Shown: in pieces, positions 36,248 to 64,000 of the stretch
Layout of the letters: each line of letters opens with the position of its first letter
How positions within the stretch are numbered: the stretch's first letter is position 1
Assembly: GCA_977030845.1 (NCBI GenBank)
Contig: OZ365113.1
Span: 12,772,001-12,836,000 of the forward strand
Source: Fimbriosthenelais zetlandica
Lineage: Eukaryota
Reading direction: 5' to 3'
DNA length: 64,000 nt
Notes under the pieces: model-generated
Told to the model about the DNA's origin: nothing
Database searches by the model: none
Seen by the model: the letters and a program-made list of their open reading frames with translations, nothing else
Program-made: the position numbers and the translations under genes

Positions 36248-39200
36248 TTAATCGGGCATGTTCCTTTTGGACCCACACAACAGTCCCCTGAAACTGGCAA
36301 GAATTCCTGATTCCTCACGCTTGGGCATCCGGTTTTCAATGGGTTGCTGGCCCTTTCTCTTCCTTTTCTCAGCATTAAGGAGATCGACCATTTTTTGGTT
36401 TTCATACTTTACCGCTAACTTGTTTGGTGTCCATCCAGCAATAGTGACTTTCTTGAGGCTTGCGCCATCTTCCAAGAGGATCTCCGCAATGTGAATAAAG
36501 CCATACTGGATGGCCAGGTGAAGAGGTGTGAAACCTTTACTGTCCTGCGCATCGATTTCACTCCCTGAGGCTATCAACAACTTGACAGTCTCTATGTGGC
36601 CATTCTCAACTGCCAAATGCAGGCCTGTGATATCCCTCCTGTCGAGGTATTGGCGGGTAGCTTTGATATCAGCTCCCTTGTCAAGCACCATTTTGACACA
36701 GGTAGTATGACCATTGTGCGCTGCTATGTGCAGTGGTGTCATATTGGAATGTCCCCCAAGGCCTGCCCTAGCGTGTACGTCAGCTCCTGCCCGAAGAAGA
36801 GCAAGTAGGATGCTCTCATTTCCTCTCTCAGCTGCCCAATGTAGTGCAGTGTAGCCTCCTGTGGCTGTCCTGTTGACATCAGCTCCCAGAGCTATCAGCA
36901 TCTGAACAGACTCCACATGTTGGTTGGAAACAGCCTGATGTATGGGTGTAATGTTGGTGACATCACCCATCACCTTCCCAACATTGAGATCAGCACCAGC
37001 ATCGGAAAGAAGAGGTAGAATGTCTGTGTGGCCATTTTGTGCTGCTAGATGAATAGGGGCAACATCAGCATGGTCATGGAAGTTAGCTGTAAGATTTGGC
37101 ATAGCACCAGAGGCAAGAAGCTCTTTGACAAGGTCAATATTACCTTGTTGCGAAGCATAGTGAAGGGCAGCATACCCATTACTACTTTGGGCATTGACGT
37201 TAGCTCCAGCTTTAATCAAAGCAGAAGCCGTCTCTGAGTGATTGTTGAAGACTGCTTGATGTAATGCAGTGATTCCAATTCTATCCTTACTGACCTTCCC
37301 ACTGTCGAGATCAGCTTTGGAGTTGATCAATTCCTGTACCACTGCTGTATGACCATCTTGGCTAGCAAGATGTAAGGCAGTAACGCACATGTGCTTATCA
37401 AAGGCAGCTTGCTTGTTGATATCACATTTTGCATCAATTAACATGCGTGTTGTTTCAGCATCGCCCTTATCTGCCGCCCAGTGTAAAGCAGTGTATCCAT
37501 CTACTTCAAGTATGACAGTTTCTTCGAACACTGATGCATCTTCGTCCTCATCACTCCGTGCACCATATCCTTCATCATTACTGTGGGATTTAGGTACGTT
37601 CTGACTCTGAACTTTGCGCTCCTCAAAATCCTCTCCATATCCTTCATCCCCTTTGATCTTCTCAATTGGTTTCTTTTTAACCTGGAGGATTTTGGTTCTT
37701 TCAGCAGCATCAACATCACATCCAGCATCAATGAGAAAGTGTGCCACTTGATGATGGCCATGCCTTATGGCATAATGGAGAGGTGTCTGGTTACAGGCCT
37801 GCTTTGACGTTGCCCCAAGATTGATGTCACAGCCTGCTGCCACAAGTTTGAGGACCACATTCTGATGGCCATAGCGTACAGCATGATGAAGAGCAGAGAA
37901 GCCATCTTTGTCCTGGGTGTTTTTCTCACATTTTGCCTCTAACAGGATAGCAACTATTTCTTCCATACCTTTCCTAGCAGCTACATGAAGGGCTGTCACT
38001 CGGACTCTCTTGAAATGAATCCTGACTTCATTGACATCACACTTTGCATCCACCAGAGCTTGGATTATGTCTGGATTCTCATTCTCCGCTGCGATGTGGA
38101 CTGGGCGGGCTCCCTCACCTTTCCCATCATCACCCATGCACTCTACATCGGCTTTATGCTCGATGAGAATCTTGACAATATCTACATTATCTCCCTGGGA
38201 TGCCAGATGAAGAGGTGTAATGGATTTACTATTTTTAGCATTGACATCACTCCCACCTTCAATGAGAGCCTCCACCGTGCTGATGTCCCCACTCTCAACA
38301 GCATCGTGTAAAGGAGTGATGTCCGAAATCGCATGACTCAGGCGCAATGCTTTTACATCTGCAGAATTATTGATGAGGAGTTTGACCAGGTAGACATCGC
38401 CATTCTGACAGGCCATGTGTAGGGCTGAACTTCCGGTGTTGTGTTCTGGTGCAGGCCTCTTGTTGACGTCACATCCTGCAGCAATTAGCTTCTCAACCAC
38501 CACCCTATTCTTGCAGAGGACAGCTGTCATCAGAGGTGTCACGCCTTTGCCTGTTGACCTGTCTATGTCAGCTTTGGCCGCCAACAGAATGTCCACCACA
38601 TTCTCGTTAAGGGACGCAGCAGCAATGTGAAGAGCTGTCCTTTCCTTCTGCAAAGAAATATATGAAACCGCTGAGTTACCTACGAAGAACATGTTTCTGG
38701 TCACATTCAATCTTCGATATAATATAATCATCAGATTTTTGGCAAAAACATAATAGTGGTCTATAGATATTGATTAGGGCCACTTCTACTAGTCCTTTTC
38801 TTATTCAGGAAGCAAGCCACTGGCCATTGGGTACTCTGATCTATTATTTATATGTAACCTTTAACTACCATTCCACATCTACCACATACGAAGCTACTGA
38901 CAATAATATTGACTGATATTCATCGATTCATAACTAATCTTCAGTAACTGCACGTTGCCAAATCATTGTGTACAGAAGCCACGAGAGAAATCAAGGATGC
39001 TCTATACAAATGTGAAAGAAAAATTAATGAAAATAATTTGTCTCAGGTTTAAAATCAATTGAGCAGAGGCTATAGTTTACAATTTATAGTGTGTTTCAGG
39101 CATGAATGAAGGTGAAAGTATCAGTTGAAAACGTGTAGATGATTATAATTAATCTTGCAGATTGATGCCTCAGATTAAAATGTGAATTGAGAGACCATAA

Positions 39201-58165: not shown

Positions 58166-59942
58166 ATGGATCAAAGACCGATTCCAGCCCCTCGAAGCTT
58201 AGCAGAAAGTTTCTTGCGATTAGAAAAGATAGACAGGGACCTATACAGGTGGTTTTTGATTTCCTAAACTTTTGTCATTCATCACTTTTGGGGATTTCTT
58301 TAGTTGTATCGTGGCCCTAGTCTAGGCGGCGGCCTAGTCGCTAGACCGTGGCACTGCCCTTATGAACTTGGCCTGGGCGGGGCTACACTGCAGCACAGGC
58401 CGAGCTGACTATCATCATTTATACTAATTCTAGAAGTACAAAACTATGGAAACCGGTGGGAGGACGTGGAGTGTTCGGTGGACAAGTTGTTGGACAAGCC
58501 CTAGTGGCTGCAGGTCATACGAAGCCAGATAATGTGGAAGTCCATAGTATACACTGTTACTTTATTAGAGCAGGTACGGTAGCGGGTAGATAAATATAAG
58601 CATCCCTTTACAACTTATAAAATTATAGGCCTCTTATTATTGTATTGATTTCCCCATTGGCTTATAATGCCTTATAATCTTACGATTTTAATTCAAATTA
58701 ATCAGGAAATCAATTTGATCTTTGGATATAGAAATTACCTATATAAGTATATTTTCAATTTCAGGTCAGGCCTCTAGCCCTATAATATACAATGTGGAGC
58801 GTCTTAGCAATGGAAAGAGTTTTTCTACTCGTTTAGTGAAGGCGGTTCAGAATGGGGAGGCAATACTAACCATGCAGGTATCCTACCACAGACATGAGGA
58901 GGCAGTCCTCACCTATCAGTCCACCATGCCCAGAGTGCCTTCTCCTGACGAATTGCTAAGTGTACCAGACATCTTAAAAGAAATGCTCACGTAATATTGT
59001 TTTACTGTTTCAGAATTCCATTTCTGTTCTGTTCCGTATAAATTATATGGAAGATATAGGCCTATGATTAAAATATTTTCATTCACAGGAGGTCCGACAT
59101 TTCCCCCAAAGCCAGGGAAAGAATCAATCTTCAGTTGGCTCAGGAAGTGCCTATAGAACTGCGACCAGTGGACCCGGGTATTCATTTCATGACCAGACCA
59201 AACCCGGATCACAAACTTCTCACATGGGTCCGAGCCAAGGGCGATATCGGTGTGTTTTTCGATATTCTAAGTATATCTGATTTAAAACCATTCTCAGTAT
59301 CATTATATATTTACTCAGAATATCCATAGGCTCACTCACAGATTTGGAAACGCAAGATTTGTTGAAAGTTAAAGTTGACTAACGATTTCTTCCTCTGTGG
59401 GACAAGGTGATGACGAGAATCTGCACCGATGTATAGCGGCCTATCTGTCTGATATGACCCTGTTACGGTCTATCCTCACTATAGACAGCAGGTTTAAAGT
59501 GACTATGATGGTATCACTGGATCATACCATCTGGTTCCACGCTCCATTCAGGGCGGACGAGTGGATGCTGTATGAATGTGTAGCTCAAAGGGCTGGTGAG
59601 TGGTCATCTATACCCCTGACAAACTATTCATTTATATTTCAGAAAAATTCTCCTTTTATTCCTGGTTAGAATGAAAGAATTAAATGAAAAAAAATTATAT
59701 CACAGGTGTTAACCTTGAAGTCAGAAGATTATAACGTTATATTTTTAATTTCTCCTAAACGTCTTAAATCACTATCGCTTTTGTAATTAATTATACTATA
59801 TTTCCCGCGCCCTGCTTCCCTTGCAGTTGGGAATCGTGGCTTGGCATTAGGTCGTTTGTGGAAACAGAATGGTACCCTCGCCATCTCCGTGGCCCAAGAA
59901 GGTTTAATAAGAGGGGAGATAGTGAATCAGAGCAAATTGTGA
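58166..59942 (+). CDS. ACOT8: Peroxisomal acyl-CoA thioesterase 8 (TesB family)
   Basis: Six in-phase exons: 58166-58248, 58434-58573, 58765-58990, 59089-59249, 59407-59595, 59827-59942. Motifs [44 protein letters not shown]; C-terminal PTS1 SKL. Confidence 0.96.
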
Positions 59943-59975: not shown

Positions 59976-60502
59976 TAAATGTATTGAAGGTAAGTGTCAA
60001 AGATATATTCCTTATTTAATATGGCTTTTATTTAAATAAGCAAAAAGGTGGAGCAGACATGAATCTCAATATTAAACAAGGCGATAATCTCGATTAAATC
60101 CGTCAGATGTCGCATAATCAAGTTCCGAATTAATCTACTCTCCCAATAGACAGCTGCACAAGACAAATGTGGTTATATTAACAAAAATGACTGAATCTTG
60201 TACAAAGACAAAGACAAACAAAATATCAATAGGTTCAAGTGTTTTCATGAAATCAAGTGTGTACGCTCAGAGTCGCAGATATAAGCCACTCAAATGTCTT
60301 GCATTTACTTAAATATGCAATAAGGTGGAGTAGGCATGGACCTCAACTTATAATTAACTTATATTCAACAAGGTGCAGGTATGCTTTCACTTCTTGAATT
60401 ATAGTTAGGTGTATGATATGCATTCACTTGTTTCCCATGAAGCGTTAATCTAAAAAATCCCAAAGTGACAAGCAACATTCAATCGGCATATTAGTTACAG
60501 AA

Positions 60503-63500
60503 TTAACGAAAAGACGCTTTGAGGACACGATCGCCCAGGTTCATGGTACAGCGATAATTATCCCGGATATATCGCTCCTCGTCCTCGGTGGGAGACGCTG
60601 AACCTCCTTCCTTGGAATATTTTCTCAAATCACGGAACACCTCCATCTGAAAGACAGAGTAATAATACTAAATTGGTCCTGAATATATAACTGTCTAAAG
60701 GGAGGAAGAAATGGTTAAATAACGACATCTGAAAGTCTTTTTGTAAATACTTACCTGTTTATGCGATACTTTAATTGGGTTTCTCATCACAATCCACTGG
60801 ACAGACTCGTTGTAAGGCGCAACTGTGAGGGAGCCTGGGTATGTCCAGTACTCCATACTACGTGCTAGAAGGAAAAAATAGATCACTGTGAAAAGCAATC
60901 ATTTACCAGCTAGCTTTGTACTTATAATCACGAGTTGTTAACCGTCTTTATACACCACGGGTTATTTGAGAGACAAATTTATTTGATGAAATTTACAAGT
61001 CCGGTAACTCACCTGGTAGGATAGACCCAGGATCAAAGAAGTGATGGGGGACTTCACACGATGCTCCCTTGTAGCGGATAGAAGCAAATACATCAAGCAA
61101 ACCCTGGATACCTTGGTGTTTCTCATTAGACGACTGCAAGAGAAATATTCAAACATCAGTCACTGACATAGGCCTAGAGAGAGTAACTTCCCCCCACGCT
61201 CCTCACATGAATGGATGACAAGGAAAAAGAGAAAGTTTGAGACTCTACCTCCAGGAAGACTCCAATCACACAGAGGCCATTTTCATACTTTGCAGCCTCG
61301 TTGAAATTTTTGAAGAGATCCTTGTTCCAGTGGACTAGATGAAGCTGTAAAAGAACGTATCTGTTTATGGGAGGACCTTTTGAATATCCCATGAAGTTTT
61401 TTGACCACAAATTCAAGCTATTACATTTTTTATAATGTTTAGGTAAGGAACAATTACCTCAGCAGCATAGCCTGAGCCATTGATTGTGTGTTCAGATCCC
61501 TTGTGATCCTCTGTACCCCAATGGAAATGGAAATGATCGAGACAGAACCTTGTGTCCTCAAGAGGACCTCCATGTAGGTCTGATATGTGAACAAAATATG
61601 GAAGTACCTTAATGTGTCGTTAAGCATATTACAATTTACAAATTTATTTTATTTTCTATACAATATTACTGTGAAAATAAAGTGTTATCTCATAACGTAC
61701 CAGAACCTCTGCAATCCACAGTGATTTTAACTGTGGTACCTGTATTGATTAAAGACTTGGTATTCTCGGGGACGTAGTTCATCACCAGTGGCGCCCTCGC
61801 CAGGGTATCATCAAAAACAGCATCATCTGGGCAAATATCAATGGGCGACTGGAATTTACCCGAGTTCCCAGCTACAAGAAAATATTTCATTTGAGTGTCC
61901 TTTCCTTAAAACTTGCTGTAATTGATGACGAATTTTTTAAGTGCAGGCTACTTAATAATTCTAGCTCAAAGAATAGGGCATGAGATGCCTTATTCAGGTT
62001 TTCAACGGCTAAGTTGGTTTGAAATTGTATGGTAAGTCTTCGGTATTTACCCAATGGAGGCTTTGGCTTTTCATTTGGCTTCTCAGTCAGTAGTTGTGAT
62101 CTGTCACTTTCCTTCTCAGGCACGTCATCGAAGGTATAGATTATCTTGGGTGTTGGTTTCTTGGCCACATAATCGCCTTCGTCATCGTCTGTAGGCGTGA
62201 TGGGGGCAAGCTGGTAGGAGTTCTTTTCCAAGAGCAAATTATATATGATATAATCCACATATATAAGCCCTACCAATATTACTAAATGATACACTTATAT
62301 ACTGAAATATGTTCTATGTTCTTGACAAATTGTGTTTCAGTTACGTTAAAAATTGTTATATTCTATATTAATAATTTGTCTTCCAGCTTTATTATGATCT
62401 GTATATATTAATTTATCTGTAGCCCTCTGTAGCATACCTTGTGTTTAGAAGGGGTGAACATTTGCCTTTTGCTACCATTGTAGCGGTTGAAATAGAAGCC
62501 AAGTAGGAAGAAGATGATGGCGCAGGTAAAGACAACTATGATGATGGGTGCAGCTCCTATCGGCTCTGATTTAGTGGCAGCCTGTGATATATAAATGAGC
62601 ACATATTCTACCTGTCAGCAACAAGCCAAGGGTATACATACACCCCCGTCAATCAATTCTTACAGTAGTACGAATATACTGAAATTATGGCCTTGTGATT
62701 TAGTACAATGTCAAAGAATGTTATATATAACAATAGTGCCAATGTAATATGTTTGACCAATTCTGAAAACATATTTCCAAGGTAATACAGAAAATTTATC
62801 AATAATAGCTTTTATAATGTGTATCTTCAAGAATGATTAGAATATTCACAGCAATAATTATTATAGATGAGTATACAGGGAGAAAAGAAGTTAAAATCAT
62901 GATTTTCCTGTCTGTGACATCCATCGTTGAAAACATTTTGTTGACTAAAAAACATACAGACATAGATTATATGGCTGTGCTAGTCATGAATCCAAACATA
63001 TATTTAGATATTACTCTAGTTGTTTAGATAGAGAGTAAAACAACAACATAAAAATAGCAGATGGATCAATATGTTTGGATCAATATTCAAGTATGATTGC
63101 TGGGAATTTAATACGATGTCTCGTGTGTCTGGTCCATTAAGATGAGCAGTCATGGGAGAGGATTTCTTTCTTTTTAAAAACTGGGCTTGGCTTATTATGC
63201 TCAACATTAAGTAGGAACTTCCAATTCCTCAAAATAATGATACATATTAAATAGAGAAAAATATCTAAAACCTCAACAGATTGTTTGCTGACTTGATCCT
63301 GACCATCTGCAGTATGTTCTGGTATATCCTTGATATCACATGCCGAATCCTCTTTCAGTTCTTGACGATCACAGCGTGGATTGTTTAATGCCTCATCCCT
63401 CTCCGGGGGACTGAGATTTCCAGCTAATTCACCTTCAGAACCTTCTCCAAGGGCGCCATGGATCAACAACAAAAAGAGACAGGAGCTAAGAGCACCTAGC

Positions 63501-63577
63501 CTTAGACCAATCCATGCCCTGGTTCCCTTCTTTTTCCTCCTCTCTCGAACATGAGTCCATATATTGTTAATATTCAT
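60503..63577 (-). CDS. Alpha-carbonic anhydrase with N-terminal signal peptide, small ectodomain and transmembrane helix (~450 aa)
   Basis: Exons 63577-63293 (or 63272), 62581-62438 (TM), 62210 (or 62222)-62051, 61871-61701, 61579-61458, 61344-61249, 61133-61013, 60864-60755, 60646-60503; the phases chain. CA motifs QSPIDI, FHFHWG, GSEH, ELHLVHWN, GLCVIGVFL, YWTYPGSLT, DNYR. The six CA exons are high confidence; their linkage to the three upstream exons is less certain. Confidence 0.85.
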
Positions 63578-64000
63578 AGATGTGATTATAGACAACCAAC
63601 TATATAAGCCGGTATTATGCTTTCACAAGTGTCTTGCAGCTATAATATGATTCTGCCTTCCTATTCACTATATGTCAAATGACTCAGAGGCCTGGAGATG
63701 CTATGTAAGTTGGAAAGCTTTTGGAGCTGCATTCCTCTGCTGTTGCCATCGACAGCAATGTGCCTGTGGCCAGCAACCTTAAAAATCAGCACTCTGTGTT
63801 GGCTTGGTAACCAGACTGCGTGCTAGAAGACGAGGGGGACTGCTCACCTCTGACTATGTGTGAGGGTGGTGCACAGTGTAGGAAATAACCCCATGTATCA
63901 TGATTCACATTAATCATCTATACTGATCTGCTGGGATTTATTCTCATGCCTATATGAAATATATGTGGCTGTCCATGTATGGTTTAAACTCACTTTAATC

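What the first reader, a model, noticed from the sequence alone, without database searches (positions are those of the whole stretch)
60503..63577. Receptor-like carbonic anhydrase with the catalytic domain predicted on the cytosolic side
Seen: signal-peptide-like WIGLRLGALSSCLFLLLIHGALG|EG; an ~60 aa acidic ectodomain with a Cys pair; TM IIIVVFTCAIIFFLLGFYF followed by basic NRYNGSKR; an ~70 aa linker; then a C-terminal alpha-CA domain. The linker exon joins the first CA exon across a 179 nt phase-1 intron, leaving little room for a separate promoter or first exon. The domain lacks the Cys23/Cys203 disulfide pair of secreted CAs (APYNES instead of PPCxE). Established: CA9, CA12, CA14 and PTPRG/Z have extracellular CA domains N-terminal to the TM, and CA4 is GPI-anchored. 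Inference: an inverted, membrane-tethered cytosolic-type CA, either cleaved type I or two-pass. It could supply HCO3-/H+ at the inner face of transporters (calcification or acid-base metabolon) or couple an extracellular cue to pH.
Basis: partly seen in the sequence, partly recalled or inferred. Interest (0 to 1): 0.82.

Follow-up and report, generated by a model that had tools for sequence, protein, structure and literature searches.

The report
Membrane receptor with carbonic anhydrase inside
The window holds an intact nine-exon gene for a single-pass membrane protein whose tail inside the cell is a carbonic anhydrase domain, the reverse of every described membrane carbonic anhydrase. It belongs to a family I could not find described, whose other members carry a TNF-receptor-type outer domain.

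Summary
Nine minus-strand exons (63577-60503), all GT-AG, give a clean 450-aa ORF: signal-like N-terminus, 61-aa acidic ectodomain with a Cys pair, one TM, a 74-aa proline-rich charged linker, then an alpha-CA domain that lacks its first ~13 Pfam positions.

The fusion is conserved, not a gene-model accident. The same exon order and the intron phases where determined (L002, L003) recur in genomic loci from other assemblies. L002 also shares the neighbouring acyl-CoA thioesterase gene. An 890-aa protein on a 2.8-kb intron-free JGI contig, probably a transcript, carries signal peptide, TNFR repeat, TM, linker and CA in one ORF. The CA domains form one clade (96/94) inside the cytosolic-type CAs.

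Glycosylation-site-rich, cysteine-rich N-termini and basic residues after the TM put the CA domain in the cytosol.

The window copy keeps His94/96/119, Glu106, Glu117 and Thr199 but lacks the His64 proton shuttle. Its syntenic relative and four others have lost zinc ligands, so catalysis is plausible here but not what the family conserves.

No paper or annotated protein with this architecture was found. No transcript data exist for this gene. The scan had not noted this architecture elsewhere in this genome.

The parts
63293..63577 (-). Exon 1: ATG, basic N-region, hydrophobic signal-like segment (aa 21-41, HGALG|EG), acidic ectodomain with Cys69 and Cys80 and one N-L-S sequon
   Evidence: An in-frame TAG lies 8 codons upstream of the ATG. 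No Pfam hit. L002 has an equivalent exon with signal peptide, acidic run and Cys loop.
62438..62581 (-). Exon 2: TM helix (aa 108-126) and basic juxtamembrane stretch ending in FTPSKHK; phase 0 at both ends
   Evidence: The motif T.G.IFF..GF.FNR is kept in at least 6 of 8 family members. pN 0.37 against pS 0.80 versus L002.
62051..62210 (-). Exon 3: cytoplasmic linker, proline-rich and charged, with the motif KKPTPKIIYTFDDVP; ends in phase 1 at PPL-G|gtaa
   Evidence: L002 has KKPPTPEIIYTHHDEP and the same phase-1 end. pN 0.43 against pS 0.85.
61872..62050 (-). Intron 3 (179 nt, phase 1). It holds a second possible in-frame acceptor (exon would start at 61904) and an in-frame ATG at 61890.
   Evidence: This is the basis of the rival 'separate soluble CA' reading.
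61701..61871 (-). Exon 4: start of the CA domain (GNSGKFQSPIDI...); Thr at the His64 proton-shuttle position
   Evidence: PF00194 profile positions 14-63, E 1.3e-6. phmmer found 47 relatives. Active-site table.
61458..61579 (-). Exon 5: HFHFHWG (His94, His96) and GSEH (Glu106)
   Evidence: PF00194 E 2.6e-12.
61249..61344 (-). Exon 6: LHLVHW (His119, Val121); Glu117 is the last codon of exon 5. The intron position matches that recalled for vertebrate cytosolic CA genes.
   Evidence: PF00194 E 7.9e-7. The vertebrate intron position is from my own knowledge, not tested here.
61013..61133 (-). Exon 7: central CA segment
   Evidence: Homologous exons of 118-124 nt (121 nt in L002 and L003) occur in the other loci.
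60755..60864 (-). Exon 8: YWTYPGSLTVAPYNES (Leu198, Thr199, Val200, Tyr203, Trp209)
   Evidence: PF00194 E 5.3e-12.
60503..60646 (-). Exon 9: C-terminal CA segment (DNYR..., ...KASFR) and TAA stop

Best explanation
One intact gene encodes a 450-aa single-pass (type I) membrane protein.

Anatomy:
- A cleaved signal peptide, or an uncleaved first helix, leaves a short acidic, disulfide-looped stub outside the cell.
- The strongly conserved TM helix crosses the membrane once.
- A flexible cytoplasmic linker of about 70 residues tethers a cytosolic-type alpha-CA domain to the inner face of the membrane.
- The CA domain has lost the first ~20 residues of the canonical fold, because the upstream exons splice in just before the QSPIDI motif.

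Family: the gene belongs to a family that began as a fusion of a TNFR-repeat ectodomain, a TM and a cytosolic CA. The branch holding the window gene and L002 has no TNFR repeat.

Chemistry: the window copy keeps all three zinc histidines, Glu106, Glu117 and Thr199. It probably binds zinc and interconverts CO2 and bicarbonate at the membrane. The rate is probably low, because His64, Asn62 and Thr200 are replaced.

Function: relatives repeatedly lose the zinc site while keeping the TM, the linker and the fold. The function shared by the family is therefore more likely binding or scaffolding by the CA fold than catalysis.

Shown here: the gene model, the conserved architecture, the clade, and the residue states. 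Inferred: topology, zinc binding, activity, and partners.
For: - Gene model: clean 9-exon ORF with GT-AG at all junctions.
- Conserved structure: the TM exon, then CA exons, lie in the same order in L002, L003, L016, L017 and L018. A linker exon between them was securely found in L002, L003, L004 and L006. Phases match where determined (L002, L003): the TM exon ends in phase 0 and the linker exon ends in phase 1 at PP[LI]G|gtaa.
- Synteny: L002 shares the convergent acyl-CoA thioesterase neighbour.
- Single ORF elsewhere: P0024 has one 2673-nt ORF on a 2812-nt JGI contig with no introns. It aligns with the window model from the TM to the C-terminus at 36% identity, E 2e-69. Pfam finds TNFR_c6 at 31.1 bits and Carb_anhydrase at 238 bits.
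- Selection: non-synonymous change is well below saturated synonymous change in the TM, linker and CA exons.
- Phylogeny: the family is one clade (96/94), window and L002 are sisters (100/98), and both sit inside cytosolic-type CAs.
- Topology: 12-14 N-glycosylation sequons and 12-14 Cys lie before the TM in L003 and P0024, against 1-2 sequons after it. Three to four K/R lie in the 15 residues after every TM examined (window, L002, L003, P0024).
- Active site: residue table.
- Structure: the AF2 model of the P0024 tail shows a TM helix, a disordered linker (pLDDT below 50) and a CA fold (pLDDT about 97). Its best PDB matches are intracellular CAs, with CA V at target-normalised TM-score 0.94.
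Against: - No RNA evidence exists for this gene in this species. The exon 1 donor is weak and the exon 4 acceptor is not the one used in L002 and L003.
- An in-frame ATG at 61890 could start a soluble 260-aa CA from an internal promoter.
- The syntenic relative L002 has H94R and H119Q. L003, L017, L019 and P0024 are also zinc-dead, and His64 is absent family-wide. Activity of the window copy is therefore uncertain.
- P0015, the sister CA, sits behind a signal peptide and a secreted-type globin. If that fusion is real, lack of the Cys23-Cys203 pair alone does not prove a cytosolic location.
- The spliced protein could not be given to the search, signal-peptide or folding tools, because it has no reference.
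Confidence: 0.78

Rival explanations
1. Pseudoenzyme receptor tail. The gene and its topology are as in the main reading, but the CA domain of the window copy does not catalyse anything useful. It works only as a docking or sensing module, as CARP VIII does on the IP3 receptor. The intact His triad would then be a leftover, or would bind metal for structure.
For: - Five of eight family members with readable motifs have lost zinc ligands. They include the syntenic sister L002 (H94R, H119Q), and they lie in both branches of the tree.
- His64, Asn62 and Gln92 are replaced family-wide, and Thr200 is replaced in all members but L018.
- The TM and linker stay conserved in the zinc-dead members.
Against: - The window copy keeps His94/96/119, Glu106, Glu117, Thr199, Val121, Val143, Leu198, Trp209, Asn244 and Arg246.
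- L016 also keeps the triad with Thr199; L018 keeps the triad but has Val at 199. This is unlikely by chance at saturated divergence.
- From my own knowledge, CA III and CA V work without His64.
Confidence: 0.35
2. Two transcription units. Exons 1-3 would make a small membrane protein that ends by read-through of intron 3 (stop at 61887). A soluble CA of about 260 aa would start at the ATG at 61890 from a promoter inside or near intron 3.
For: - Intron 3 is open in the exon 3 frame as far as TGA 61887-61889. That stop overlaps an ATG in frame with exon 4.
- No transcript data exist for this species.
Against: - The open intron and the ATG are not conserved in L002 or L003.
- The linker exon ends in the same phase-1 donor in three loci, and that donor matches the phase of the CA exon.
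- P0024 shows the fused mRNA exists in a relative.
- A soluble CA lacking the first 20 residues and starting MKYFLV has no counterpart among the canonical CAs retrieved.
Confidence: 0.08
3. CA domain outside the cell. The N-terminal hydrophobic stretch would not be a signal, and the TM would act as a type II signal anchor. The result would be an ordinary ecto-CA tethered by its N-terminus.
For: - The window's N-region is unusually long and basic for a signal peptide.
- P0015 suggests that a CA of this clade may travel the secretory route.
Against: - Basic residues follow the TM and acidic residues precede it in all four full-length models examined.
- Paralogues have disulfide-rich, heavily sequon-bearing TNFR ectodomains N-terminal to the same TM.
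- The CA domain lacks the Cys23-Cys203 pair and has six unpaired-looking Cys.
Confidence: 0.04

Closest known systems
Membrane-associated alpha-CAs IX, XII and XIV (type I) and GPI-anchored CA IV
   Same: An alpha-CA fold attached to the plasma membrane, with a signal peptide and one TM. The language-model atlas places the P0024 tail nearest to CA14 and CA9 clusters.
   Different: In those enzymes the CA domain precedes the TM and faces outwards. It carries the Cys23-Cys203 disulfide and belongs to the extracellular CA clade. Here the CA domain follows the TM, lacks the disulfide, and branches within cytosolic CAs.
Cytosolic and mitochondrial alpha-CAs (CA II, III, VII, XIII, V)
   Same: - The CA domain is 44-47% identical to the closest cytosolic-type CAs retrieved, including CA7.
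- They are the best structural matches.
- As I recall, the intron position after Glu117 matches vertebrate cytosolic CA genes.
- CA V also swaps the N-terminal segment for a targeting sequence.
- CA III and CA V also lack His64.
   Different: Those are soluble proteins. None is known to be fused to a TM and an ectodomain. The window protein lacks the N-terminal aromatic cluster (Trp5, Tyr7, Trp16) altogether.
CA-related proteins (CARP VIII, X, XI) and the CA-like domains of RPTP gamma and zeta
   Same: A CA fold is used as a non-catalytic binding module after loss of zinc histidines. L002 carries the same pair of substitutions (H94R, H119Q) that I recall for CARP X. RPTP gamma and zeta show that a CA-like domain can be part of a receptor.
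   Different: The window copy keeps all three histidines, so it is not a CARP by definition. The family does not group with the CARP X sequence in the tree. In RPTP gamma and zeta the CA-like domain is extracellular and the enzyme part (phosphatase) is inside. Here the arrangement is the reverse.
TNF receptor superfamily
   Same: Paralogues P0024, L003, L016, L017 and L018 have a signal peptide, TNFR_c6 repeats (rescanned at 31-51 bits against a cutoff of 29.4 in four; precomputed hit in L017), a stalk and one TM.
   Different: No death domain or TRAF-type tail; the tail is a CA domain. The window protein and L002 have no TNFR repeat, only a short acidic stub with one Cys pair.
CA II-anion exchanger 'transport metabolon' (a soluble CA recruited to the inner membrane face)
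   Same: The proposed role is the same: a CA held at the cytoplasmic face of the membrane.
   Different: There the association is non-covalent and disputed. Here the tether is built into the polypeptide. No transporter partner is known, and none was tested.

Membership tests
Alpha-carbonic anhydrase (PF00194) | Significant match to the family profile | tested here: met
   Exons 4, 5, 6 and 8 each exceed the 27-bit cutoff (28.7-47.4 bits). P0024 scores 238 bits.
Alpha-carbonic anhydrase (PF00194) | Complete domain including the N-terminal W-x-Y ... GP..W segment | tested here: not met
   The match starts at profile position 14. No such segment is found in exons 1-3 or in the introns.
Catalytically competent alpha-CA | Zinc ligands His94, His96 and His119, plus Glu106, Glu117 and Thr199 | tested here: met
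   All are present in the window protein by alignment to a 260-aa fish CA used for numbering.
Catalytically competent alpha-CA | Proton shuttle His64 and the rim residues Asn62, Asn67, Gln92 and Thr200 | tested here: not met
   The window protein has Thr64, Thr62, Lys67, His92 and Val200. This suggests at best a slow enzyme.
Catalytically competent alpha-CA | Measured zinc content and CO2 hydration | not testable with these tools
   Needs recombinant protein.
Cytosolic-type CA clade | Branches with CA I/II/III/VII/XIII-like sequences and lacks the Cys23-Cys203 pair | tested here: met
   In the tree the family sits inside the cytosolic-type group, apart from CA4 and the CARP X-like sequence. 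Position 203 is Tyr.
Extracellular membrane CAs (IX, XII, XIV) | Domain order: signal peptide, CA domain, TM, short tail | tested here: not met
   The order here is signal, stub, TM, linker, CA.
CA-related proteins (CARP) | Loss of at least one zinc histidine | tested here: not met
   The window copy keeps all three. The feature is met in L002, L003, L017, L019 and P0024.
TNF receptor superfamily | TNFR_c6 cysteine-rich repeat in the ectodomain | tested here: not met
   Window exon 1 and L002 exon 1 have no Pfam hit. Paralogues P0024, L003, L016 and L018 pass the cutoff on rescanning; L017 has a precomputed hit.
New TM-linker-CA family (defined here) | TM motif T.G.IFF..GF.FNR, then a basic stretch, then a linker exon ending in phase 1, then CA exons starting just before QSP, all on one strand | tested here: met
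   Window TM reads TCAIIFFLLGFYFNR. The order is seen in seven further sources, and the phases were confirmed in L002 and L003.
New TM-linker-CA family (defined here) | The exons are joined in one mRNA in this species | not testable with these tools
   No transcript data could be reached. Exact-sequence look-ups of two window ORFs found nothing.

The most novel reading that the evidence does not exclude
This would be a receptor family with a new kind of output. An extracellular TNFR-type or acidic ectodomain would control, through a conserved TM helix, a carbonic anhydrase or CO2/bicarbonate-sensing pseudo-anhydrase on the cytoplasmic face. An outside cue would then be converted directly into local pH or bicarbonate chemistry, or internal CO2/bicarbonate would be reported to the membrane. 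The window gene would be the ligand-domain-free, catalytically live version.
Probability: 0.18. Interest if true: 0.85.

Novelty: new variant of a known kind. Interest (0 to 1): 0.66.

Why it matters
Every described membrane-bound animal alpha-CA faces outwards. CA action at the inner face has only been proposed through loose, disputed binding of soluble CA II to transporters. A polypeptide that hard-wires a cytosolic-type CA to the inner face gives a natural test case for whether membrane-proximal CA matters. In paralogues the same tail is joined to a TNF-receptor-type ligand domain.

The family also shows several independent live-to-dead transitions of the zinc site on an otherwise conserved scaffold. 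That makes it a compact system for studying how an enzyme becomes a pseudoenzyme.

If the host is an annelid, as other notes and the sister sequence suggest, the family may bear on CO2 handling in worms that depend heavily on CA.

Tried and rejected
1. The full spliced protein could not be searched, folded or run through a signal-peptide predictor, because it has no reference. I worked exon by exon and through relatives instead.

2. Aligning all exon fragments to P0024 (A1) misplaced the TM, linker, exon 7 and exon 9 pieces. I discarded it and used a two-row alignment (A3) for the last database search.

3. Three word-indexed searches of 5.8 billion proteins found no annotated full-length protein with TM before CA other than P0024. 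The long hits are tandem CA repeats. The index is word-limited, and eukaryotic annotations may split the gene, so absence is not proven.

4. I considered an 'ancestral exon relic' idea. GKDTQMKYFLVAG upstream of exon 4 resembles the canonical GPxTWxKxFPxAxG (E 0.005). I rejected it. FLVAG is what a polypyrimidine tract plus the acceptor translates to, P0010 has the same string, neutral sequence would not survive this divergence, and L002 and L003 show nothing similar.

5. The open frame through intron 3 and the ATG at 61890 are not conserved in L002 or L003. I treat them as chance but keep them as a rival reading.

6. The linker exons of L016, L017 and L018 could not be identified with confidence (scores 32-41).

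7. Exact look-ups of two window ORFs found nothing, Rfam found nothing on the window, and the GCA_022702875 accession appears in no paper. The species remains unidentified.

8. Six literature searches and four papers read gave no description of this architecture. The Riftia proteome paper (PMC6918071, supplement) mentions three possibly membrane-bound CAs without giving their architecture.

9. The metagenome scan added only two family loci, L004 and L006. The other hits analysed are ordinary CAs.
Full report
**Observation**

Reading the minus strand of 60000-64000 and joining nine exons gives a 1353-nt ORF of 450 aa. The exons are 63577-63293, 62581-62438, 62210-62051, 61871-61701, 61579-61458, 61344-61249, 61133-61013, 60864-60755 and 60646-60503. 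All borders are GT-AG.

The protein has these parts, in order:
- A basic N-region of 20 aa.
- A hydrophobic segment at aa 21-41, ending HGALG|EG.
- A 61-aa acidic stretch (16 D+E, 6 K+R) with Cys69 and Cys80.
- A strongly hydrophobic TM at aa 108-126, followed by NRYNGSKR.
- A 74-aa linker that is proline-rich and charged.
- An alpha-CA domain.

Pfam PF00194 matches exons 4, 5, 6 and 8 above its cutoff, and the match starts at profile position 14 of 254. The canonical W-x-Y...GP..W start is therefore missing. Only one CA gene lies in the window.

**Is the fusion real?**

A phmmer search with exon 4 against 1.84 billion representatives gave 47 hits. Most are single-exon ORFs from unannotated assemblies. 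About ten of them begin just before QSP, as the window's exon does, instead of at the canonical GP..W.

One hit, P0024, is an 890-aa protein from a JGI sample. It is encoded by a single ORF (91-2763) on a 2812-nt contig. Its parts are a signal peptide, a TNFR cysteine-rich repeat (31.1 bits against a cutoff of 29.4), a long glycosylation-site-rich stalk, a TM, a linker and a CA-like domain. It aligns with the window model from the TM to the C-terminus at 36% identity, E 2e-69. All genomic relatives have eight introns in this region, so an intron-free contig is best read as mRNA-derived.

Genomic loci fetched around other hits show the same exon order on one strand:
- L002: signal and acidic Cys-loop exon, TM exon, linker exon, six CA exons. 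I built a 528-aa model.
- L003: TNFR exon, TM, linker, CA. I built a 784-aa model.
- L016, L017 and L018: TNFR, TM, CA.
- L004 and L006 are partial: L004 holds the linker and the first CA exon, L006 the TM, the linker and part of the first CA exon.

Where I determined them (L002, L003), intron phases match the window. The TM exon ends in phase 0 after FTPS/YTPS plus basic residues. The linker exon ends in phase 1 at PP[LI]G|gtaa. CA exons 5, 6 and 8 are about 122 (119 in L016), 96 and 110 nt in all five full-length loci; exon 7 is 118-124 nt.

L002 also has an acyl-CoA thioesterase gene convergent downstream. So does the window at 58.4-59.7 kb. L002 is therefore the positional counterpart in another species.

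Against L002, synonymous sites are saturated (pS 0.73-0.85). Non-synonymous differences are 0.37 in the TM exon, 0.43 in the linker exon and 0.29 in the CA exons, against 0.60 in the ectodomain exon. Exons 2 and 3 are therefore constrained as coding sequence in the frames used.

The TM itself is unusually conserved. T.G.IFF..GF.FNR is kept in at least 6 of 8 members, which hints at a specific contact within the membrane.

**Place among CAs**

I built a maximum-likelihood tree of seven family CA domains with 20 other CAs.
- The family is one clade (96/94).
- Window and L002 are sisters (100/98; 59% identity).
- The TNFR-bearing members form the remainder.
- The whole family sits inside the cytosolic-type CAs, away from CA4 and a CARP X-like sequence.

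An AF2 model of the P0024 tail shows a TM helix, a disordered linker (pLDDT below 50), a short helix and a confident CA fold (pLDDT about 97). Its best PDB matches are intracellular enzymes: CA V at target-normalised TM-score 0.94-0.95, then CARP VIII, CA VII, XIII, III and II. From my own knowledge, CA V is a precedent for replacing the N-terminal segment of a cytosolic-type CA with a targeting sequence.

**Topology**

This part is inferred.
- In L003 and P0024 the region before the TM carries 12-14 N-x-S/T sequons and 12-14 cysteines, including a TNFR repeat. The region after the TM has 1-2 sequons.
- Every TM examined (window, L002, L003, P0024) is followed by 3-4 K/R within 15 residues and preceded by acidic or neutral residues.
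- The CA domain lacks the Cys23-Cys203 pair.

Whether the window's first hydrophobic segment is cleaved or stays as a helix, the C-terminal CA domain ends up in the cytoplasm.

**Active site**

- The window protein keeps His94, His96, His119, Glu106, Glu117, Val121, Val143, Leu198, Thr199, Trp209, Asn244 and Arg246.
- It has Thr62, Thr64, Lys67, His92 and Val200. The loss of His64 and the Gln92-to-His change are family-wide.
- L016 and L018 also keep the triad, although L018 has Val at position 199.
- L002 (H94R, H119Q), L003 (H94E, H96R, H119Q), L017 (H94D, H96R, H119Q), L019 (H94C, H96R, E106D, H119Q) and P0024 (H94I, H119Q) cannot bind zinc in the normal way.

Live and dead forms occur on both sides of the tree, so the zinc site was lost at least twice. 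The window copy is plausibly a slow enzyme. What the family conserves, however, is the tethered fold rather than catalysis.

**Rivals**

The two-gene reading rests on an in-frame ATG at 61890 and an intron 3 that stays open in the exon 3 frame. Neither feature is conserved in L002 or L003. A type II, CA-outside topology contradicts the charge distribution and the paralogues' ectodomains. I give these readings 0.08 and 0.04. The open question is enzyme versus pseudoenzyme for this particular copy.

**What is known**

Six full-text searches and four papers read gave no description of a TM-then-CA or TNFR-plus-CA protein. Three large protein searches returned no annotated protein with this order of parts other than P0024. 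These searches are word-limited, and annotated annelid genomes are few, so 'undescribed' is provisional.

Other agents' notes call this genome annelid-like; I did not test that. The sister CA, P0015, follows an annelid giant-haemoglobin-type globin on one transcript contig, which fits an annelid setting for the clade.

**Verdict**

This is a real, intact gene with a conserved and apparently undescribed architecture. It is tempered by the repeated zinc-site losses and by the lack of RNA and biochemical data.

Noticed in passing
L020:30-1265 (protein P0015; JGI sample 3300035602): One ORF joins a signal peptide and an annelid giant-haemoglobin-type extracellular globin (PDB hits 1yhu, 3wct and 1x9f, E 1e-28 to 1e-24) to a CA with a canonical active site. 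The CA begins exactly at the family's exon 4 boundary and is sister to the TM-CA family. It is either a real globin-CA fusion or a chimeric assembly.
   Followed up: partly
L002:9860-10060: A tandem duplication of about 109 nt copies the acceptor and the first nine codons of the first CA exon. The upstream copy runs into stop codons.
   Followed up: partly
window 61872-61905 (minus strand): The acceptor used by L002 and L003, directly before G-K/N-Y/H-QSP, is absent in the window (ctcgg instead of ag). Two upstream in-frame AGs could serve instead, giving exon starts at 61871 or 61904, a difference of 11 aa.
   Followed up: partly
window 58456-59669 (+ strand): Acyl-CoA thioesterase exons (PF13622, PF02551, PF20789) lie convergent with the CA gene. 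The same neighbour lies downstream of the CA gene in L002.
   Followed up: partly
window 36248-38731 (minus strand): An 827-aa uninterrupted ankyrin-repeat ORF, already noted by another reader (s1-231886). An exact-sequence look-up found no record of it.
   Followed up: no
TM exons: window 62438-62581; L002:6386-6541; L003:9450-9575; L006:621-764; L017:8278-8420: A juxtamembrane motif, [YF]TPS followed by basic residues, is kept about 10 residues after the TM in five of eight members. It could be a proline-directed phosphorylation or sorting signal.
   Followed up: no
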